A stretch of DNA of 64,000 nucleotides, from assembly GCA_965285935.1 (NCBI GenBank), contig OZ260661.1, positions 138,694,001-138,758,000 of the forward strand. Direction: 5' to 3'. Positions 40,301 to 52,300 of this stretch are shown here, in pieces. The position numbers were made by a program, and so were the translations under genes. This stretch comes from Ophelia neglecta. Lineage: Eukaryota. Within the stretch, counting starts at the first letter, position 1. The number at the start of each line of letters is the position of its first letter. The notes under the pieces are model-generated. The model made no database searches. It had not been told where the DNA came from and saw only the letters and a list, made by a program, of their open reading frames with translations.

Positions 40301-43300
40301 AAAACCTAGATACCTAACTATTTATAGTAAATCTTTATAACTGACCTTTTGCTTTTCTGATGACTTTAACTCTCGCCCCAGCACTGCCAATCTTGGTTTC
40401 TACCATTGCTTTGAAGTCTATCTTGAACTTGACACCATACTGCTCTGTCCATTCTATGTCAGGCATTTTAGAATCAAAAGCCTCCTCAATCTTAGAATTG
40501 ATTTCTTCTGGATATTCTTTGAAATCACCACTTTCCTCATAGTACCACTGAACCTATGATCAAATCAACTACCTGAATATTGACCACAGCAAGTACATGG
40601 CTTGATCGGAAACACATTAATGTAAAAACTTGTAGAACGAATGTAACAAATAGTTGTATGGCATTATTACCTATGTCTTTGCAATGCATACTTGTGTGGT
40701 TTATTAAAAGGATACACTAGAATTGCACAGATAGCCTGGTAGCCCCACCAATTTTACAATAATAAATGACAAACTGGTAAAGATCAAACAGTAAGTGAAC
40801 AAGGGCCCGCAGAGGCCAGGAGTCCCCTGCTGCAGGATCATGTATGAAAAGGTAAATGTCAATTGGTCATATTACTCATATAAGATGTTATCCTGGACCA
40901 AATAGTTTCAAGATTTGATAATTTTTAAAAAGTCGAAAATTTACCCAAAAGATCTGGTTCAAATAGGTCATAGGTCATTTTTTTATTGTTGCCATTGAAT
41001 TCCTTGACCTTAGTTTGGTAGTAGTAGTTGTTGTTGTTTGGGGTTTTACGTGGCTTTCAACACATATCGGTCATATGGCCACAGTGCCTACCTGTGACAG
41101 TGGGCTCAATGCCCTCTTTAGAGTGCTGCCTCACTGGAGTACCTGCTGTAGACACCAGACAGGGAACCCCAACCAGTCACATTATACTGACACCGGGTTG
41201 ACCAGTCCTGAAACTACCCCCGAAATACCGGGCGCCTGGCAGGGGAGCTTTCAGTACCTATTTTTACGTTTTAGGTTTGACGCGATCGAGCTTTGAACCC
41301 CGATCTACCACTTGCGAGGCGGACGCCCTAACCACTCGGCCACGCTTTGGTGGTATTTGTTAGGTAGTTTGGTAGTAGCAGACATATTATCATTAGCAAC
41401 AACTACTTGATATGAAAAAAAATATGTTTTTTTTTTAGTGGCTGCTGTAAATAACTTTGGAGATCTGCTCCGGAAACGAAAAGCAGGTCCGGAGGCCAAG
41501 GTTTAGGAGCCAAAGGTCAAAATATAGGTCATACACAGCATGCCAGTACCAAGGGGATATTTCACATGTAAGATGATTATCCTGGACCAAATAGTTTCAA
41601 GATAGGATAATTCTCCCTTTAAGGTCAAGGCCATACTGAAAGGTCAAATGTCACAGGTGTCTCAAAAAGGTTAAAAGGCACAAGGATGTAATATAAAAAC
41701 GCCATATGTGCTTTTGTGTGGCTACTATAAATAACTATGGAGATCTTCCTTGGAAATTAAATCAGCTCAAGAGGCCAAGGTTCAGGGGTCACAGGTCCAA
41801 AAATAGGTCATGTGCTGCATGCCAGTACCAAGATGATATCTTTCATGTAAGATGGTAACCCTGGATCAAATAGTTCCACATTTATGGCTCTGGACACTCT
41901 GTGTGTTGGCTGGCCGGATGGATGGTCAAGACCTAAACTAAGAGTCCCCCCCCTTCTTTTCGTGGGGTAGGGAACTAATAATGTATGGTATGTTTGAATT
42001 TACCAATTTACACTTTATTTGGGACATATACATTAGCTATTATTGGCATGTTTCATTAGGAACTACATAGAACTAAATGTGGACAGAAGTCGACGTGAAC
42101 AGTCGAGCGACACCTAGCGGGGTCGCCTGGATGCCTCCGCCAAGAAGTTAATTTGTGGACAAATGATTTTGGGAATAATTGGTCAGAAGCTAAAACATTT
42201 TATATGCCTTAATACATTTTATATGCCTATCTCCTACCTAGAAAGATTTGTCATTGAAAAATAAACCCAAGGTGAAAATCAACGATACCACTGCATTCCT
42301 TGTATACCATATCGTTTTAGTGTTCAAAACATTTTATATGCCCATCTCTCACCGTTAAGATGTGACCTTGATAAATAAACCCAAGGTGTAATTCAAGGAC
42401 ACCACTGGATTCCTTGTATAGGATTTCCTATTAGTGTTTTATACATATTATGTGCCTATCTCCCACCGATAAGCTTCCACAAGATCCCATGTTACTGCAT
42501 TTTTAAATTATTGCCCTCTGCGGCCATCTTGTTTTTCCGATCCCGACCAAAACCGTTTCAGCGCACGGCAATGCCCCATTGATGACTTCCCTGAAGTTTT
42601 GGAATAATCCCTGCATCCGTTCAAGAGATTTCGCGCGACATACAAACATTACCTGATCCATTGTGGCGGCTATCTTGCTTTTCCGATCGGTCAGAAAACA
42701 ATTTGTAATCATCTTCTACTAGCCATAACAAACTTCCATGAAGCCACAAGTGAATTCCTCGAAGCCCTGAGGAGTTATAGCGGTTAAAAGTTGGCACGGA
42801 CGGTTGGTTGGATGGTCGGTCGGACGGACGGACGGACAACCTGACTACATAATGCCTCCGGACCCTTCGGGGCGGAGGCATAAAAGTTGGGGGTGTGAGG
42901 TATAATACCTCAGGATTAAAACCATAATTTGAATTTTAAAGTAGTAAGCACCAATCAGCATTTCTTCCAGTGTGTCGGTCATGGGATATTAAAAACGTGT
43001 TGGCATATCACAATATTTAAGCCAATCACCTCAATTATATATTATTTTACTTTGAAAAATACTCCGCTATTTATGTCCTGCTTGAAATTTGTTAATTGTT
43101 TTTCTTTAGAATGGAGATGGTTGGGGATAGTGTGTTAAGTTCAGGGCGACAGTTTATAAGGATACTCCAATGACAAAGATCTTCATTTTAGGGAACGTGA
43201 GATGGGACCCCTATTTCATGGATTTTTGTATAATTCGAGCTTAGGGTTTCCCTTGATATAAATGTAAAGGTTGATATTCAAAGCGATCATACAAAGTTGG

Positions 43301-46300
43301 GAGTATGTTTGTGTGTGTGTTTGGGGGGGGGGGGGGGTCATAAACAATTTTATTTATAGAGTTAAACAATTGTTAACAAAGATGTGTCCTCTTGTGGGAT
43401 CACGAGTCATATCAGGTGGCTAAAATGTGTGTTAATTTCATCCTGCCTAAGTCCGATGATTATTGTATCATCAGCTGCACACATATTTTATTCCTTCTAA
43501 TGCACATGAAACATTAAATGCGGTCAAACTTGAGCATTATATTAGAATCACACCATAGCATTTCATGCAATGCTATTTCGACAGTTTTTCCAACTTTCGG
43601 TATGTTAACATTCATATTTTGTTTTTAACTGAAATGGAAGATCATGGCCAAATTGAGAAATGCATGTTTGCCTTTTGCTGCATATATCATTAACAGCTCC
43701 ATGCTAAAAATAATACCTTAAATCAATTTTCAACCAGTGAAACAATAGAATTGTAGATTCATGTCCAAACCACAGTCACTGATAGGTTTTTGAATCTATG
43801 AGTTCCTACATAATTGATTGTGTATTGGCATAGTCACTGGTCGTGTCCATGTACCAATCCAACGTGTCCATCCAATTAATGTATTCTCGGAAGTGAAAGG
43901 GGCGAAAGTGCTTGTATACAACTAAGAAACTTCTCCGAGGGGACTAGTCCAAACTATTTGCCCCGAGGGAGGTGACCAGTGAACTATTTCCCGAGACCGA
44001 AGGTCGAGGGAAATAGTTCACTGGTCTCCTCCCGAGGGGCAAATTGTTTGGACTAGTCCCCGAGGGGCAAGTTTATAGTTGTTTTATTATACATCATTGA
44101 AAAATCTTTGCACATTTAACATCTCTATTGGTTCTATGCTCTAGATAGATCTATAGATTGTTTTACCTATTGTTCCATTACTGCAATAAAAATGTACACC
44201 ATTATATGGAAAACAATAAATTTTATTTAAACAACCAGAAGTACCAGGTACAGCAGTCTGACTTCTCAATCACAGAATAAATTACTAGATATAATTCAAC
44301 AGTTTAATAAATTACAAATTAGCTATTGTAGTCATAAATAACAATAAATATTCTATAATAAATTACTAATTGAACAGTTTAATAAATTACCAATAAGTTA
44401 TTGAAGTGATAAATTACAATAAATATTATGTAATAAATTACTAATAGGTTATTAAATAGTGTGCCACTTTAACTTTTAGCCACTTATGCTGAGTAATTAT
44501 TGTTAATATTTATGTTCACCACACAGTCTTTAAATGACATCCCAGTGAGAGATGCATCCATTTTTTGGCGCTTTGACAAATGAACTGATTGTGTGTTTGG
44601 GGCATTGGCTGTGTTAATTATTGGGTTGATAACAATGTCTTCACAGATACTCTCAACAGCCACTTGATTTTCCCTTGCTAGCATAACACCTGTAGAGTCT
44701 TTTGGCATATTATTATCAAACAGATCATCTAAATCTAAAGGGCACATAATATCAAAATTGGGTTCCTGGGGCATAAAGTAAGGCTCCTGACGCACAAAGT
44801 TTGGTTCCATGGGCACAGAATTAGGGTCTTTGGACACAGAGTTAATTTCCTTGAGCACAGATTTATCAGGGTTCAATTTTTCTGATCCTGTGGCTGCACT
44901 TATCGCCCTGCTCATACGAAGCCTTGTGCCCTCCTCAATATGTCTGCTATAAGATCGAATTGAAGCTTCAGACTTGTGGCCAGACACCCCCATGATGTGC
45001 CTGGCTTCAAACCCATGGCTGTCCAGCATGGTAACTGATGTGGCCCTCAGGCAGTGGTTGGTATATTCATGTGACAATTCACATTGAATGGAAAGATGTT
45101 TCATTTTATTATACAGCATATTTTTACCCAAAGGCATATTGTCATACCAGATTGATGAATCCTGAAGTCTAGAACAGGGCCTTTGCCAAAAGTAAATACA
45201 ACTTGGGTTAAGTTTCTGCAAATATTTCTCAAAAGAAATAACAGGGCACTTGGGATCATCCGGAACTGCATACATTCTCCCTTGCTGGCTCTTTGTATCA
45301 TCCTCACCACGGTGATTTTTTGTGAGAGTGTCCTTTGTATACTTGACATATTTGTTCCCTGATGAATCTGTGAATACTTCCAAGTCACTTGCCTTCATTT
45401 CCCTTAAGTTTTCTCTGCCACGCTGACAAAGGTGAAGCATAATGTCGACAAATACTTTATTTTGGAGTCCTGTAGGGTTGCCAATGTCAAGCATGTTATG
45501 GTTATAAAGTTTTCTAAGGTCCTCACGCGTGAGCGGCTCCTTGTGGTTGACATCAGCTTTGCCCTGCTGCTTCAAGTTTACTACTACACCAGCAAACACA
45601 TCGTTGGCAGGCTTGAACTGTGGGTCATTAATAATGTCAATACCTCGTTTCTTGAGAAAACTCTGTTGTATTCCATACCGGATTGTACTAAGGGATTTCT
45701 TCGTATATAGAGATCCGTCCATCTTTCTGGCTTCTGCATAAAATTTAGCCAGCACACTAACAAGGTCGCTGTCTGACATTTCGTCAATACGTGAGATGAG
45801 TTTTTCATTGCAATATGCTTGCAAAACATTTGTTCCGTTTTTTATTACATCTTTGGTCTTCTTTGCGTGTCTATTATCAACTAGATTTTCTACTTCTTGA
45901 TCACTCAATGCTGCAAACCTTGCCATTATCAGATTATTCAGCTGTTATTGATGTTCCGGGATCCCGCCGCGTTTGTTTTACGTTCGAAGTAGAGCTATGC
46001 GCATGGTTTCGTATTTATTGAACCCGCGTTTTCGGCAACATAGTCCAATTTTAAACGTGCAAATATATTTGAATAATGTATATTCTTATTTATTATCTTA
46101 CTTTTTATAAACATGAAACAATTGACTGTAGTTTGTTTGGAAAATACTAATACGACAATAAAAATGGTGGTTTCGTTAGTGAAGTGCGTAAATTAGCCAC
46201 ACGAGGCCGCCACTGCTAGCCATGCGCTAGTTTCACGAACTAGTCCCCGGGACTAGTTCGTGAAACTAGCGTACGGCTGGGAAACTAGGCGATTCTAACC

Positions 46301-49300
46301 AACACCATTCAGCCAATCACAGGGCGGGATTTTTCAATGATGTATAATAATAAAAACTGGCATATGTTATGTTTGTTGCAGATATCATTACATGCAACAA
46401 TAGTTTAATGACTGACATAGCTATTGGTATAAGATTGGTTTTGCTATCACTTCTATTTTAGGGAACAAAGATCGTGTCTGTTGGTTATATTGCCTATAAA
46501 AGGTGACATATCAAGTGTTCGTAAAATATTGAAACAATGAGATTAATTCAGAACACTTGTGTTCATAGTTATGCAGTAAAGAAATAAAGCAGATAACAGA
46601 GCTTACCTGTTTTTTGATCAAGACAGTCTTTGATTTTGCATGTTTTTTTCTATTATTTTCCATAAATATTGCATATATTTTTTCCACAACAGACGATATG
46701 TCATCAGAGATTCCCTGCAGACGGATCCGCTTGACCTTTGGTCTATTTTCAATTGTTATTTTCACCCCATATGTTTGGTCAAGACTCTGAATTCTGGCAA
46801 TCTGCATATGAAATTCAAGAATATAGTATAAACACATTTTCATTGTAAAGCGAGTTCTAAAAACACAAAAAAAGAATTCAAATATTTTCAAAAATGGCAT
46901 CATGGTAGTGTGTCGTTTGAATACCTGTGTTTCATCAAGTTTAGCAATGTTTTCCTGATCAGCTTCCTTGTCCATGACCTTGTCCTTACTCTCATCATCA
47001 CACACATCCTCTATCTCTTTTATGGCTGCGTCTATCTCCACCATAGTTCTTGCACACACACGCAGTTTGGTCACTGGTGCAGGAGATGGAAGGACCTTCA
47101 ATGCCGGGAGCCGCACATTTGGTTCAAGTGACTGAGTGGGTATGTCTACATCAGTCAAACTACTATAGAGCCCAGCTAAATAAAAATGTTGTTACTTAGA
47201 CGGCTACTTAACCACAGAAAGCTAATCATAAACAAATATCACAAGGAACTGTATTAAATAGATAGTTAAGATCGTTATTTTAGCATACATGTCATCCGGC
47301 CCCTTCAGCTTCTCTTTAAACAAAAAAAGACAGAAAAAATTGCCAATCACTCATTTTCAACATAACTTTGGCAACAAAACATAATCCGTTTTCCACCATA
47401 CGTCAATATAATCATGTTAAGCCTATGAGGCTTCCTCCCTGTCCATGTCCACACCGACAATTAAACTATTAAAGAGGTTAATAGAAATGTTTGTTTGAAA
47501 ATTCCCTGCTGAAGAATTCAAAAACTGGAAAACGCCAAAGCATGCAGTTTACTTTAGACTCTCAATGTGTTTTAGCATTGTAGCTGCTAAACTATGATCA
47601 GCAAAGTGACATAAGTGATTTGATGTTCATGATTTTTTAGGGCGTGCGGTATATTGGTGGGTCGACATCAACGCAGCCCGACATAGTCATTAGTGCCCAA
47701 AGGAGAGCCGAGGGTGCTATTTACTATGAAAGGCTGATGCTCTTTGAAGACGGGCCACAAATAAACTGCAGTGCCCCCAAAGAATTCATGTTACTACTAT
47801 TATTATCATCTTCCGCTGCCGATGATGACTAATAAAGACGCAACCTATTTTAAGCAACTGAAACTTAATTTTCACTACTAGCAACGGGCCGACAATGAAC
47901 ATGAACATTCTATGACATAGACATTCGAGGCGGGTCTGATACTGAAGTGAGGCAGCACTATAAAAAGGCAATCGAGCTTACTGTCACAAGTAGGCAGCGT
48001 GGCCGTATTACCGATAAGTGTTGAAAGCCACGTAAAAACCCCAAACAACCAACCAACCTGAGTCTCAATTTGACCCCAAGGCACCCAAGGTCAAATTTGA
48101 GGTCCCTACTGGTTTTCTTGTATATGATTTCCTATCAATGTTCAATACATTTTGATATGCCTATCTCGCACCGTCAGGCCTTAACAAGATGGCATTTTTT
48201 ACCATAGAAAATGATTTCCCTTGGCGGCTATTTTGTTACGATTGGCCCAAAACATTTTTTTCTGGTCAGGGCAATTGTCCATCGAGGATTCCCATGAAGT
48301 TACAAAATTATTCCCACAACGGTTCAAAGACATCACATCCTGAACAAATCCTTACCAACAAACCATGTCAGCCACCTTGTTTTTTATCGCGCCGATTAAC
48401 TCGACTATTTATGCAAAAATTTATCCAATGAAGAAGCAAATACATTGTAATACATCGCAATTCTTGACTTATAGCTTATAGGCTTGGACTTGGACAAGTG
48501 AAGGAAAGAAGACGGAAGAACGTCCTGACTACATAATGCTTCCGGTTCCTTCAGGGCGGAGGCATAGATAACATGTTAATGTACAGAAATATAGGCTAAA
48601 CATGGTGTTAAAAATGATTAAAACAAATATGACATCTTGATTTATGATATTAAGTGTACAGTAAATTATTATTTCATGTTAATTGAGATACTTAAATAGC
48701 AGATTCTCTTTGATAAGTAAACTTATCAATACATATATATATATATACCTGCAGTGGCCACACTTCTCGGAAGAACTGCCTTCTTTGGGGCTGGCGTTCC
48801 GTCTACCAACTCAACCTCACTGTTTCCAAGAATAGACTGCAGACTTTTGTGGAATTGAGCCATTGTTCTTTGCTGGTTGTCAACCAAATATACTTTTCGC
48901 AGTTTAGTGGCTTCTTTCTGATTCTCGCAGTAGTCTTTGATTGCACTTACAATGGTATTGGTGGATATGTGTAGGGGAACTCCAAACACTCCAGCACTGA
49001 GGGCTGGTATACCTACCGAGTCCAACCTTTTCTCAACGGTAAGTGTTAAGCATTGATATATTGCCTCATAAATAAGGTTGATTTCATTCCGATGGCCTCC
49101 CTGCCACACTGGGCCAACAGCATGGAGAACATGTTTACATGGTAGCTTGCCGGCACTTGAGACAAATACTTGACCCTCCAGCATTGTGCCTCCTGATCTT
49201 ATCTTAGTATCACATTCTGTCTGTATTGAGTACCCACCTGAAATACAAATATAAAAAAATGTTTTCCCAGTTGTGTAAACTATGAAGGGGAATGCAAAGA

Positions 49301-52300
49301 GACAAATCACAAATGCCCTTAATCATCTTAGAAGAAAACCCTATGGACATTGGCGATTAGAACTTTTACATACCTTTGTCAACAATTGCTCGGGCTAGGC
49401 CTCCACAATGCTGCAGATTTTTATTAGCAGCATTTACTATGGCTCCCACTTGGTGTGTAGTAAGGTCTCCTAGACACACAAAAACTTCTGTTTCATTCTT
49501 CAGCCTAGCCTTAGAGTATGTTTGGTCTTTACCTGAGAATAATAAAAAGTGTTTTGCTTTATTGCCATTGGTCGAAAGCAGTCCAGTTGTGTACTGACTT
49601 CCAAAATAAAATCAATTGAAACCATTATTCTGAGCACTATGCATAACTTACCCGTGTTTGCATAACATCTTTTTGGAATTCCTGGGTGAGAGTGTTTCTT
49701 CTTTTTTTCATCACCAACCAGCTGTATGGTAACCGAATTTCGACTTTCTACAGCCACGATAAAGTCTTGACCTCTTTTGCTCACAAAGTATTTACCCATT
49801 CCTTAAATGAGGAAATGGTCAGTCTTAATGTTGCCATTGTTGATAAGGCATCCCAACCTTACAACATTTAAGAATGTAGATGCAAACATGATATACCAAC
49901 TTGCCTTATCTATCCAAATAAATCAATGACATTAGGTAGCCAAAGCTTCCAAGGCATACGCGTGCACACGCGTGCACACACGTGCGGGTGCGCATGCGCA
50001 CGTGTCCCCCCATGCTCACAAACACAGTAAAACGTTAAAGTTTAAGAACAGTAAGGTATACCATGCATTACCCTAGATATATTTCCCTGTGGGCCTACCT
50101 GGTTTGTTGACATCATGATCACGGGATACAATGCTACCAATGAGGTCCTGGACCTTTTTCTCTGCAGGGGGCATACCATACTTGTTTCCTTTTACCACCA
50201 TAAGGCATTCATCATCTTCAATCTTGAACTGAATGTCCACTAGCATACTTTTCAAATCACAGACAATCTGACGGATTTCTCCAGCCATGGCTTTCTTGGC
50301 AAATTTGTATTTGCCACTGTCTAAGACGATTGCATGTTCCAAGATAGTATTCTCAGAAATAAAATTCTTTATATCTTCTATGATTAGATTGCATTGGTTC
50401 CAGATAGATGCTACACATATTTGTCCATTATCCGGATTGACATTTATCTCCAAAGTCTCGGGGGAATTGCTAAGTAATTTTTTTCGTAGTTGTCTCCATT
50501 GCTCAGTCTCTAGCACTGTGGAGCCATCTGTCACAGTAATTTTTGCTTCGATGACCTCCTTCGTAATGACATTAACACCGGTCTTCAAGTCTCTGTCATT
50601 CATGGCATACACAGTAAGATCTGTTTTACCAGCATCCCAAATCATGCGCATATTTTTTACCTTAAAAATGTGATCCCGAACAGGTCTTTTTTTCAGCAGG
50701 CGGCAGACACTCTCTGGCACATCAGGGAAGTTCTCAGATACAATGCTATTAACAACTTCGTACATGTGAAGCTTTGCCGAAGTGATGACATTGGGCAAAC
50801 CAGTAAATACTATTTCTGTGTTGGATATTTTGATTTCTATATTTGGTAACACTTCTTTTTCCTTTAGATCAAAACGGATGGCACGCAGCATTAAAAGCTG
50901 GTGTAGTTTCAAGGTAACCTGGAATAACGAGAAATTTCCACATAGTTTACTTCCTTAGGTCAAAAACTGGACATAGTTTTGTTTTAATCAGACTTCAACA
51001 CTTTGAGCATTGACTCTGTTATTGTTGGGTCAAACGTCGGACATACAAACAGCTTACCTTGTTTTCTTGGAAAACATTTATCATACCTGTTCGGTCACCG
51101 ACTTTTTAGCATGGTCCAATTCCTCTTCAAGTTTTCTCTGAATCTCTGTCAGGTGATAAGCCACTTTAAACACCGGCTCGTCCAGTCCCCATATTTCGAC
51201 AGAGCATGTCGAGTCACAGGTTTTTATCTATGAAACATAACAAGTTGTTCAAAAACCAAATGCCTCCCACCAATGAAAAAGAAAGAAGTATGTCCTGATG
51301 TCCACGCCTGGCAAAGTCAAAACATCGAGGCCTTCAATTTTGCATTAAATATTAAGCATGGGCATCAGTTTGTTTATCATTAATGTATTTAATGGGTGGT
51401 CATTGCGTGAAGCCACTGTTTAAACCATTCTTTCGCTCGCTCGTTAGCTGGGCCATTGTATTTATTACCTTACGCATCACTAGCAGTAAGCCGCATTAAG
51501 GTGTCACCTATTGTAATAGATCTGCTCTGCCACGTCTTTGTTGTCCGCCCCAGGAGCGCCCGGTTGGTGTTGGCTGTCCTGCCGGTAATCTGCATGCCAA
51601 CTCCCTGACAGAGTAGCTCTAGAGAGGCGGCGCTATTGGCCGACGTGTTGCGGTCATCCCACGCTTGACCGGACCGCTCCGGCGGCGATAACGCCGGGAC
51701 AGGGTTGGTCGTCAGTTAACAGAGTTCTTTACAGGTTTTATGAGAACTGTTCGTAGATCGTCGCGCATCCCGCCGGCTGCGACGAAACAGATTGACTATC
51801 TCATCTCTATGATGGACGACCTTGGTGAGATTGAGTGGCCGTCAATGAGAACGGCGCACCGTCAAGTGCTCCAGGCAATGGAGCTAGGCACGGTCGGATG
51901 GGACGACCAAAAGCAATTGGTTGAGATAAGAGAAACTACAGTCAGGCGCGCCGAAAGACAAAGGCAGAATTATGTGCCGCCACTGGGTAGACAATCTCAG
52001 CCAAAGCGGGCAAACGTACCTGGAAGTCAGGAGCTTAATCCGTGTCGTGCTTATCAGCAACGCGCGTGTGAAAATACAGATGACCATTACATCGGCGGCA
52101 TTCGCCGCGCGCACGTTTGTGCACACTGCGCTAAGGTCACCGGAAACGCGTTCCGCCATCCTGAGTTTGAGTGAAGACGCAAGGTCATGGCCAGCAGCTA
52201 CCCATCCGCTCATCAGCAAAAAAACGAAGCAGCGGGGGCCCAGGATCGCCAGGCATAAACTCGGACCCCCGCAAAACTGAAAACTGTAATGCATTCGCTG

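What the first reader, a model, noticed from the sequence alone, without database searches (positions are those of the whole stretch)
43919..44081. Strand-asymmetric 163-nt hairpin with tandem GA mismatches every 28 nt
Seen: the arm pattern is ..ctcc GA [26 nt] GA [26 nt] GA gacc GAA ggtc GA [26 nt] GA [26 nt] GA gggg.., and each 26-bp stem is perfect except for one T-T mismatch. Established: c-GNA-g triloops and tandem sheared G.A pairs are unusually stable in DNA, whereas the complementary strand would carry TC/TC mismatches and a TTC loop. Inference: the structure is selected to fold on the + strand (the template strand of the ORF, so not an mRNA structure). It could give strand selectivity in the way extrahelical bases do in attC, or act as a priming or origin signal.
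Basis: partly seen in the sequence, partly recalled or inferred. Interest (0 to 1): 0.8.

Follow-up and report, generated by a model that had tools for sequence, protein, structure and literature searches.

The report
One-strand hairpin ending a Crypton transposon
The 163-base hairpin is the conserved end-piece of a small jumping gene that moves with a tyrosine recombinase, and its odd G-A pairs, kept in distant relatives from oysters to a sea urchin, suggest that one DNA strand must fold on itself for the element to move, which is not described for animal transposons of this kind in the papers I could search.

Summary
Window 43918-44082 is an 81-nt-arm hairpin with a C-GAA-G triloop and three tandem GA/GA mismatches per arm, 28 nt apart.

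It is not isolated. It sits 3 nt inside the left end of a 2,436-bp Crypton-type transposon (43915-46350). The element's only gene is an intact tyrosine recombinase (44484-45926, minus strand).
- At least 40 near-identical copies, mostly internally deleted, all keep the hairpin.
- An empty-site contig confirms the element boundaries.
- Just inside the hairpin lies a perfect 23-nt inverted copy of the right terminus, so on the GA strand the two ends can pair side by side at the crossover.

The same design occurs in other families: GA, 4 bp, triloop closed by C-G, 4 bp, GA, at the element's 5' end.
- Two more families in this genome have it, with recombinases 36% and 25-26% identical.
- So do elements in two oysters, a scallop, Solemya and a sea urchin.
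- Stem sequences are unrelated between families.
- 15 of 19 tandem mismatches are GA/GA, and three more are one transition away.
- Wobbles favour the same strand.
- Gene orientation is not conserved. The 28-nt spacing is private to this family.

Best reading: a strand-specific folded DNA recombination site that works like integron attC. This is not tested biochemically. I found no description of it in the literature I could search.

The parts
43915..46350 (.). Whole mobile element, 2,436 bp (family A): a Crypton-type transposon that encodes only a tyrosine recombinase.
   Evidence: At least 40 genomic copies at 98-99% identity begin at 43915 and end at about 46350. One contig skips 43915-46350 exactly, with 2 nt (TA) ambiguous: an empty site. 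Depth is about 30 on the flanks, 79 on the ORF and 1,200-2,000 on the ends.
43915..43917 (+). Left terminal TAT. The crossover point lies immediately 5' of it. The flank ends in T-A-N.
   Evidence: Left flank has T at -3 in 23/28 copies, A at -2 in 26/28, and T/G/A at -1. Family C has TA in 18/18. The tandem-copy junction reads ...TAATAA|TATAC....
43918..44082 (+). The hairpin: 81-nt arms, GAA triloop at 43999-44001, and three tandem GA/GA pairs (43937/44062, 43965/44034, 43993/44006).
43941..43950 (.). GGACTAGTCC motif (also at 44050-44059). The core ACTAGTCC is shared with the right-end palindrome and is a candidate protein-binding site.
   Evidence: All six ACTAGTCC matches in the 64-kb window fall in the element's two palindromes; 1.2 are expected by chance.
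44084..44106 (+). Inner inverted copy of the right terminus, 23 of 23 nt complementary to 46328-46350, starting 2 nt after the hairpin.
   Evidence: Read directly. Equivalent inner copies exist in family B (17 nt) and family C (12 nt, with one G:T), and in oyster, scallop, Solemya and Saccostrea (10-14 nt).
44292..44441 (.). Two 75-nt tandem repeats between the hairpin module and the recombinase stop codon.
   Evidence: family D1, 88% identity.
44484..45926 (-). Tyrosine recombinase gene, 480 aa, of the CryptonA / DUF3504 type.
   Evidence: Pfam hits: DUF3504 2.3e-10, Phage_integrase 2.3e-6, QRICH1 6.2e-6. Catalytic R169, K203, H291, R294, H317 and Y326 are conserved in the alignment. Relatives at 40-58% identity occur in molluscs, echinoderms, corals and Limulus.
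46216..46280 (.). Second palindrome (31-nt arms) in the 5' region of the element. It carries two ACTAGTCC motifs and is specific to family A.
46328..46350 (+). Right terminus, ending ...GTATAATAA. The crossover lies immediately 3' of the final TAA.
   Evidence: Families A, B and C all end in TAA. A GTATAAYAA-like end is conserved in Solemya, Saccostrea and the oyster/scallop family.

Best explanation
The hairpin is the cis-acting end module of a CryptonA-type tyrosine-recombinase DNA transposon, and it is built to fold on one DNA strand.

Read 5' to 3' on the GA strand, the element is:
- target TAN, then the cut;
- TATAC;
- the long hairpin;
- an inverted copy of the right end;
- the recombinase gene, in either orientation;
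- the right end ...GTATAATAA, then the cut.

Proposed mechanism (inferred): when this strand is single-stranded, at a replication fork or as an excised single-stranded circle, the C-GAA-G mini-hairpin nucleates folding and the stem zips up. The inner copy then pairs with the right end. The two termini come to lie side by side on one continuous stem, which rebuilds a duplex-like core site around the crossover. The recombinase cuts and exchanges that strand only, 3' of TAN at the left junction and 3' of TAA at the right end. Replication then supplies the second strand, as in integron cassette recombination.

The GA/GA sheared pairs, the GNA-type triloop and the G:T wobbles keep the stem stable on this strand. 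On the complement they become weak TC/TC, TTC and A.C features. This would give strand choice, and it would also discourage cruciform extrusion of a long palindrome in duplex DNA.

Shown: the anatomy, the terminal position, conservation across families and species, the strand asymmetry, an intact catalytic set, and precise boundaries without a target duplication.

Inferred: single-strand folding in vivo, single-strand exchange, and replicative resolution.
For: - Terminal position in three families of this genome: the hairpin starts 3-9 nt from the 5' end on the GA strand.
- All internally deleted copies keep the hairpin.
- The exact apex GA-4bp-GAA-4bp-GA is present in families A, B and C, whose recombinases are 36% and 25-26% identical.
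- The same design lies next to Crypton recombinase genes in Magallana gigas, Argopecten irradians, Solemya velum, Saccostrea echinata and Diadema setosum.
- Census: 15 of 19 tandem mismatches are GA/GA, 3 are GA/AA, all on one strand per hairpin; G:T versus A.C is 12:2.
- The GA strand is predicted to be more stable in 9 of 9 cases, by 0.4-8.1 kcal/mol.
- Oyster versus scallop: 6 compensatory pairs, 5 one-sided changes all to G:T on the GA strand, none broken. The hairpin DNA is 88% identical although the proteins are only 62% identical.
- The inner inverted copy of the other terminus adjoins the hairpin in families A, B and C and in four of the five other-species elements; none was found in Diadema.
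- Gene orientation is flipped in family C while the hairpin keeps its polarity relative to the element end.
- There is no target duplication. The target rule is TAN and the element ends in TAA.
- Head-to-tail tandem copies share a single junction.
- The catalytic residues are intact.
- d(GCGAAGC)-type mini-hairpins with a sheared G-A pair are exceptionally stable in DNA, and GNA triloop stability depends on the closing pair (PMC13037366, PMC3201870).
- Precedents for tyrosine recombinases acting on one folded or one specific strand: integron attC and CTX phage, and the strand-biased circles of Vibrio SE elements (PMC9345347).
Against: - There is no biochemical or in vivo evidence here for single-stranded intermediates.
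- Both strands are predicted to fold strongly, with a difference of only a few kcal/mol under nearest-neighbour parameters.
- In an integrated copy the right end is 2.2 kb from the inner copy, so end-pairing needs a long single-stranded stretch.
- The ds circle junction also has ordinary inverted half-sites (GTATA / TATAC) around a short AT spacer. A classical duplex reaction is therefore possible.
- The triloop is not GNA in two species (TTT in Solemya, AAC in Saccostrea).
- Four of nine relatives examined from other species showed no such hairpin within 5 kb.
- Only single copies were examined in the other species.
Confidence: 0.5

Rival explanations
1. Single-strand initiation (priming) signal. 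The element passes through a single-stranded circle, and the hairpin, with its SSB-resistant mini-hairpin apex, is where complementary-strand synthesis starts, as at ssDNA phage origins and plasmid ssi sites. It is not the recombinase substrate itself.
For: The window apex contains CCGAAGG, the same mini-hairpin as in RSF1010 ssiA. Family C has GCGAAGC. Such motifs recur at origins of the G4-type phages (PMC13037366). The strand asymmetry fits this reading as well as the main one.
Against: A priming site need not lie at the terminus. Here it is fused to the crossover point and to the inverted copy of the other end in every family where ends could be mapped. No primase-like gene is in the element. 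Two species lack a GNA loop.
Confidence: 0.15
2. Duplex DNA reading. The palindrome is an array of mirrored binding sites for the recombinase or a host factor (for example ACTAGTCC, and the 28-bp units), acting as accessory 'arm' sites in ordinary double-stranded recombination at the GTATA / TATAC junction, possibly with cruciform extrusion. The GA dinucleotides only mark polarity.
For: ACTAGTCC occurs only in the element's two palindromes, at both ends. The junction has inverted half-sites. Covariation between arms is also expected for mirrored protein sites. Both strands fold.
Against: Mirrored duplex sites predict GA on one arm and TC on the other, not GA on both. That asymmetry, always in a Y-GA-R context, recurs 15 times in seven families with unrelated stems. 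One-sided changes go to G:T on the same strand (12:2 and 5:0). The inner copy of the right end is 169 bp from the left cut unless the stem is extruded.
Confidence: 0.2
3. RNA-level function: a structured antisense or 3'-UTR transcript, a terminator, or a hairpin source of small RNAs.
For: Tandem GA pairs are also stable in RNA. The hairpin lies downstream of the gene in six of seven families.
Against: In those six families the GA strand is antisense to the only gene. In family C the hairpin is upstream and on the sense strand, so its polarity follows the element end, not the transcript. The loop is a DNA-type C-GNA-G triloop, not a GNRA tetraloop. There is no Rfam match. No RNA run holds the stretch (weak evidence).
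Confidence: 0.05
4. No function: a palindrome left by an inverted duplication, with chance mismatches.
For: The family is very young (98-99% identity), so conservation within the family says little.
Against: The same architecture occurs in seven families across two phyla with unrelated stems, compensatory changes and a non-random mismatch type. It is retained in every deletion derivative.
Confidence: 0.02

Closest known systems
Crypton DNA transposons (CryptonA group; Goodwin et al. 2003; Kojima and Jurka 2011, PMC3212892)
   Same: A single gene for a DUF3504-related tyrosine recombinase, no reverse transcriptase, no target duplication, abundant non-autonomous deletion derivatives, and animal hosts including molluscs and echinoderms.
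   Different: The published description states that no terminal repeats, direct or inverted, were found in animal Cryptons. [quoted passage not shown] Here there is a conserved terminal hairpin, an asymmetric inverted copy of the other end, and conserved end motifs.
Integron attC sites recombined by IntI (folded bottom strand), and CTX phage attP(+) with XerCD
   Same: A tyrosine recombinase paired with an imperfect palindrome of about 60-170 nt. Structure is conserved rather than sequence, non-Watson-Crick features are strand-specific, and the crossover lies at the base of the stem, where two half-sites are rebuilt by intrastrand pairing.
   Different: Those systems are bacterial. Their strand choice rests on extrahelical bases and an unpaired central spacer, not on tandem GA pairs and a GNA triloop. 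The recombinase family is different. Folding in vivo is not shown here.
DIRS1-type retrotransposons: internal complementary region (ICR)
   Same: A eukaryotic tyrosine-recombinase element that carries an internal sequence complementary to its own joined termini, thought to bring the ends together on a single strand.
   Different: DIRS elements replicate through RNA with reverse transcriptase and have long inverted or split repeats. This element has no RT, and its 'ICR' is the right arm of a hairpin plus 12-23 nt.
Helitron2 / Helentron ends (asymmetric terminal inverted repeats plus terminal hairpin; PMC3627910)
   Same: The same end topology: one inverted repeat at the very end, and its partner subterminal, separated from the other end by a hairpin. 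Gene orientation is reversed in some families. Compensatory changes occur in the hairpin.
   Different: Helitrons use a RepHel HUH nuclease-helicase and rolling-circle replication. No such gene is present here, and the association is with tyrosine-recombinase genes in every family.
IS200/IS605 (IS608) single-strand transposition
   Same: Cleavage on one strand 3' of a short target-like motif in the left flank, and 3' of a similar motif that forms the element's right end. No target duplication. Hairpins at the ends.
   Different: The enzyme is an HUH Y1 transposase in bacteria, the hairpins are small and present at both ends, and guide-sequence base triples are used.
SE (strand-biased circularizing integrative elements) of Vibrio (PMC9345347)
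   Same: [quoted passage not shown]
   Different: These are bacterial elements with several recombinase genes. No long GA-mismatched hairpin is described in the text I read.
DNA mini-hairpins d(GCGAAGC) / C-GNA-G triloops and tandem sheared G.A pairs in a Y-GA-R context
   Same: The apex sequences here (CCGAAGG, GCCGAAGGC, GCGAAGC, GGCCGCAGGCC) and the C-GA-G or T-GA-A contexts match the motifs known to be unusually stable in DNA (PMC13037366, PMC3201870). The Y-GA-R context rule is from my own knowledge of the NMR literature.
   Different: Those are physico-chemical motifs, not a genetic system. Their stability in these particular sequences has not been measured.

Membership tests
Crypton (CryptonA) transposon | Encodes a tyrosine recombinase with the catalytic R-K-H-R-H/W-Y set | tested here: met
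   R169, K203, H291, R294, H317 and Y326 are invariant or nearly invariant in a 12-sequence alignment. Pfam Phage_integrase hit.
Crypton (CryptonA) transposon | Recombinase related to DUF3504 / animal Crypton proteins | tested here: met
   DUF3504 at 2.3e-10, above the curated cutoff. 264 relatives at E <= 1e-10 in molluscs, echinoderms and cnidarians.
Crypton (CryptonA) transposon | No reverse transcriptase or other transposase; a DNA element with one gene | tested here: met
   The only ORF of 150 aa or more within 43915-46350 is the recombinase gene; the shorter ORFs listed there all lie within its span. The element is 2,436 bp.
Crypton (CryptonA) transposon | No target-site duplication; short identity at the crossover | tested here: met
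   The empty-site contig has 2 ambiguous nt, TA. The flank rule is TAN and the element end is TAA.
Crypton (CryptonA) transposon | Absence of terminal inverted repeats, as stated in the published descriptions | tested here: not met
   A 23-nt perfect inverted copy of the right end lies subterminally at the left end, and there is a 163-nt terminal hairpin. This departs from the published description rather than from the family's defining enzyme.
Integron attC-type folded recombination site | Imperfect palindrome conserved in structure, not in sequence | tested here: met
Integron attC-type folded recombination site | Recombined as a folded single strand by the integrase | not testable with these tools
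   Needs biochemistry or strand-specific genetics.
Integron attC-type folded recombination site | Extrahelical bases and an unpaired central spacer set strand choice; R and L boxes with a GTTRRRY core | tested here: not met
   The asymmetry here is tandem GA/GA plus a triloop. There is only a 2-nt asymmetry (TAT versus A) at the family A junction and none in family C.
Helitron2 / Helentron | RepHel (HUH nuclease plus helicase) gene, or dependence on one | tested here: not met
   No such domain in the element. The hairpin is associated with recombinase genes in all seven families.
DIRS-like retrotransposon | Reverse transcriptase / RNase H plus a tyrosine recombinase | tested here: not met
   A single recombinase ORF in a 2.4-kb element.
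Stable DNA mini-hairpin (C-GNA-G) with sheared tandem G.A | Sequence rule: GNA loop closed by C-G; GA/GA in a Y-GA-R context | tested here: met
   Met in families A, B, C, D and the Diadema family. Solemya and Saccostrea have TTT and AAC loops.
Stable DNA mini-hairpin (C-GNA-G) with sheared tandem G.A | Measured extra stability of the GA strand over its complement | not testable with these tools
   Nearest-neighbour prediction favours the GA strand in 9 of 9 cases, but these parameters do not model sheared pairs well.

The most novel reading that the evidence does not exclude
Animal Crypton transposons move through a folded single DNA strand. The terminal GA-mismatched hairpin, together with the inner copy of the other end, forms an attC-like substrate on which the tyrosine recombinase exchanges one strand only, and replication completes the event. 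This would be the first eukaryotic counterpart of integron / CTX-type single-strand tyrosine recombination. It would also offer a mechanistic bridge to the internal complementary region of DIRS retroelements.
Probability: 0.4. Interest if true: 0.9.

Novelty: new variant of a known kind. Interest (0 to 1): 0.78.

Why it matters
How Cryptons transpose has never been shown experimentally. In the papers I could search, their ends are described as featureless, and animal Cryptons as lacking any terminal repeats.

A conserved, strand-asymmetric terminal fold gives the field three things:
- a concrete cis-element to test;
- a way to find element boundaries and non-autonomous copies in invertebrate genomes;
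- a specific, falsifiable mechanism, namely single-strand recombination by a eukaryotic tyrosine recombinase.

It also bears on two wider questions. One is the origin of the DIRS internal complementary region. The other is the ancestry of the Crypton-derived vertebrate genes ZMYM2-4, QRICH1 and KCTD1. The finding is also a natural example of tandem sheared G.A pairs and GNA triloops being used as a biological signal in DNA.

Tried and rejected
- tRNA and Rfam scans of the window found nothing.
- An RNA-level role was set aside because the fold's polarity follows the element end, not the gene.
- The 28-nt period as a conserved ruler was rejected. Homologues have spacings of 14, 18, 19, 27, 31 and 45 nt.
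- I looked for the hairpin near relatives in a second M. gigas locus, Oculina patagonica, Mytilus edulis and Lytechinus variegatus. None was found within 5 kb. These may be domesticated or dead copies, or may carry different ends.
- One ENA contig could not be fetched.
I did not try another route.
- The sequencing runs were only assembled contigs of one sample with no RNA. They could show an empty site and copy-number ratios, but not circles, strand bias or expression.
- Junction reads would in any case be confounded by genomic head-to-tail copies.
- Literature searches for Crypton together with hairpin, palindrome, stem-loop or single-stranded returned no description of this structure.
Full report
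**1.
Window 43918-44082 is an inverted repeat with 81-nt arms and a 3-nt centre. Read directly, the arms carry GA opposite GA at 43937/44062, 43965/44034 and 43993/44006. This is 28 nt start to start on each arm, always as C-GA-G. The apex is GA, a 4-bp stem, the loop GAA closed by C-G, a 4-bp stem, GA.

As single-stranded DNA the + strand folds at -72.4 kcal/mol (z = -17.4) and the - strand at -69.1. In the whole 64-kb window, only an (AT)n run and a second palindrome of the same element are comparably long hairpins.

Two details need correcting. The T.T mismatch of the inner 26-bp stem and a missing C after 44074 are private to this copy; the family consensus has a perfect inner stem and a better-paired base. 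The hairpin is also not inside the ORF. It lies about 400 nt downstream of the ORF's stop codon.

**2. What it belongs to.**
The window is eukaryotic nuclear DNA from a 762-Mb invertebrate genome, with no tRNA or Rfam hits.

The ORF at 44484-45926 (minus strand, 480 aa) matches DUF3504, Phage_integrase and QRICH1. It keeps the catalytic R169, K203, H291, R294, H317 and Y326. It has 40-58% identical relatives in oysters, scallops, sea urchins, a brittle star, corals and Limulus. It is a CryptonA-type tyrosine recombinase.

A genome search with the hairpin returned 40 or more places at 98-99% identity. Comparing 30 of them with the window shows:
- All copies start at 43915 and end at about 46350.
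- Most are internally deleted, keeping only about 190-380 nt at the left end and about 170-510 nt at the right end.
- Only two intact recombinase genes exist, the window copy and a segmental duplicate 57 kb away, plus one copy whose gene matches in two separate pieces.
- Contig depths agree: flanks about 30, gene about 79, ends 1,200-2,000.
- One contig of single-copy depth joins 43914 directly to 46351, with 2 ambiguous letters (TA). This is an empty site that fixes the boundaries.

The hairpin is therefore the left-terminal module, 3 nt from the end, of a 2,436-bp mobile element.

**3. How the hairpin is wired to the ends.**
Two nucleotides after the hairpin, 44084-44106 is a perfect 23-nt reverse complement of the right terminus 46328-46350. 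On the + strand, the right arm plus this inner copy is therefore complementary to the joined termini (right end followed by left end).

A genomic head-to-tail dimer shows that junction as ...TAATAA|TATAC....

There is no target duplication. The left flank ends in T-A-N: T in 23/28 copies, A in 26/28, and never C at the last position. The right flank begins with TA in about two thirds of copies.

The motif ACTAGTCC occurs six times in the window. All six lie in the hairpin or in the second palindrome at 46216-46280. It is a likely protein-binding motif shared by both ends.

**4.
The genome holds other Crypton families.

| Family | Reference locus | Size | Recombinase identity to the window's | Hairpin |
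|---|---|---|---|---|
| B | L038:1194-3153 | 1.96 kb, hundreds of candidates | 36% | 68-nt arms |
| C | L048:418-3149 | 2.73 kb | 25-26% | about 50-nt arms |

The stems of the three families are unrelated in sequence, yet all have the exact apex GA-4bp-GAA-4bp-GA. In all three the hairpin starts 3-9 nt from the element's 5' end on the GA strand. An inverted copy of the other terminus follows it: 17 nt in B, and 12 nt with one G:T in C. All three elements end in TAA. Family C's left flank is TA-N in 18 of 18 copies. Head-to-tail copies occur in families A, B and C.

In families A and B the gene lies on the strand opposite the GA strand. In family C it lies on the GA strand. The fold's polarity therefore follows the element end, not the transcript.

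Outside this genome, I found hairpins of the same style 200-400 nt downstream of Crypton recombinase genes, with GA on the antisense strand, in:
- Magallana gigas (L081)
- Argopecten irradians (L084)
- Solemya velum (L087)
- Saccostrea echinata (L088)
- Diadema setosum (L082, loop GCA)

In four of the five, TATAC precedes the hairpin on the GA strand, and a 10-14-nt inverted copy of a GTATAAYAA-like sequence that lies upstream of the gene follows it. In Diadema no such inverted copy was found. Four other loci (a second M. gigas gene, Oculina, Mytilus, Lytechinus) showed nothing within 5 kb, so the trait is not universal.

**5. Strand asymmetry, quantified.**
- Across the hairpins, 19 two-by-two internal loops were predicted. 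15 are GA/GA. 3 are GA/AA, which is one G-to-A step away and equals CpG decay on the other strand. 1 is TA/GT.
- Within each hairpin, all lie on the same strand, in Y-GA-R contexts.
- G:T wobbles on that strand number 12, against 2 A.C mismatches.
- The GA strand is predicted to be more stable than its complement in 9 of 9 cases.
- Oyster and scallop hairpins are 88% identical although the proteins are only 62% identical. They show 6 compensatory pairs, 5 one-sided changes all to G:T on the GA strand, and no broken pair. The scallop has a new GA/GA where the oyster has Watson-Crick pairs.
- Spacings between GA pairs vary: 14, 18, 19, 27, 28, 31 and 45 nt. The invariant part is the apex.

Mirrored duplex binding sites would put TC on the second arm, so they do not explain this pattern. 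It is what selection for folding of one DNA strand predicts. C-GNA-G triloops and d(GCGAAGC)-type mini-hairpins with a sheared G-A pair are exceptionally stable in DNA (PMC13037366, PMC3201870). That tandem G.A pairs are sheared in Y-GA-R contexts is from my own knowledge.

**6. Mechanism.**
My best reading (confidence 0.5) is as follows. On the GA strand the hairpin nucleates at the mini-hairpin apex. The inner copy pairs with the right end. The two termini are then aligned on one stem, rebuilding a duplex-like core around the crossover. The recombinase exchanges this strand only, 3' of TAN in the left flank and 3' of the terminal TAA, and replication completes the event.

In function this resembles integron attC and CTX attP. 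In cut topology it resembles IS608. In the self-complementary junction it resembles the DIRS internal complementary region. In end layout it resembles Helitron2. Tyrosine-recombinase elements that circularise one specific strand are documented in Vibrio (PMC9345347).

What is shown: the anatomy, conservation, asymmetry, precise boundaries, and an intact enzyme. What is inferred: folding in vivo and single-strand exchange.

Rivals:
- A single-strand priming signal (0.15). The apex CCGAAGG equals the RSF1010 ssiA mini-hairpin.
- A duplex array of accessory sites, or a cruciform (0.2).
- An RNA role (0.05).
- No function (0.02).

**7. Novelty.**
The reference description says no terminal repeats were found in animal Cryptons (PMC3212892). 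A 2026 study of DUF3504 CryptonA elements reports poorly conserved terminal repeats and never mentions hairpins (PMC13465315). My other searches found no description of this structure. Repbase entries could not be consulted.

I class it as a new variant of a known kind: a Crypton with a conserved, strand-asymmetric terminal fold.

**8. Limits.**
- Only single copies were examined in the other species.
- No RNA or raw-read data were available.
- Nearest-neighbour energies model sheared pairs poorly.

Noticed in passing
window 46216-46280: A second palindrome (31-nt arms) lies near the right end of the same element, upstream of the recombinase start. It carries two ACTAGTCC motifs like those in the hairpin. 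It is found only in family A, not in B or C.
   Followed up: partly
window 44292-44441: Two 75-nt tandem repeats (88% identical) lie inside the element, between the hairpin module and the recombinase stop codon. Their function is unknown.
   Followed up: no
L002 (G000:C1:138793651-138796851), 57 kb downstream of the window copy: The whole element plus at least 1.5 kb of flank on each side is duplicated at 99.8% identity. This is a segmental duplication rather than a second insertion. It carries the same private T at the position equivalent to 44027.
   Followed up: partly
L020/L021, L062/L064; G000 contig C11 around 51.4-57.0 kb: Head-to-tail tandem copies of deleted derivatives occur in families A and C. 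Family B forms an array with a 1,773-nt period. An oyster satellite (CgiSat40, 673 bp) is also annotated as Crypton-derived in PMC8268682. Cryptons seem prone to seeding tandem arrays.
   Followed up: partly
L081:6150-6330 versus L084:6915-7100: The oyster and scallop elements share a hairpin that is 88% identical in DNA, while their recombinases are only 62% identical. This suggests either very strong constraint on the hairpin or horizontal transfer between bivalve lineages.
   Followed up: partly
window 41021-41354 and 47940-48051: Another dispersed repeat. It matches the flanks of several other insertions of this Crypton (L004, L007, L030), in L030 directly abutting the hairpin end. Its identity was not determined.
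   Followed up: no
window 46511-50912 (minus strand): Exons resembling PARP14, with Macro (2.7e-22) and weak KH matches, flank the element. The Crypton sits beside or within this gene region.
   Followed up: no
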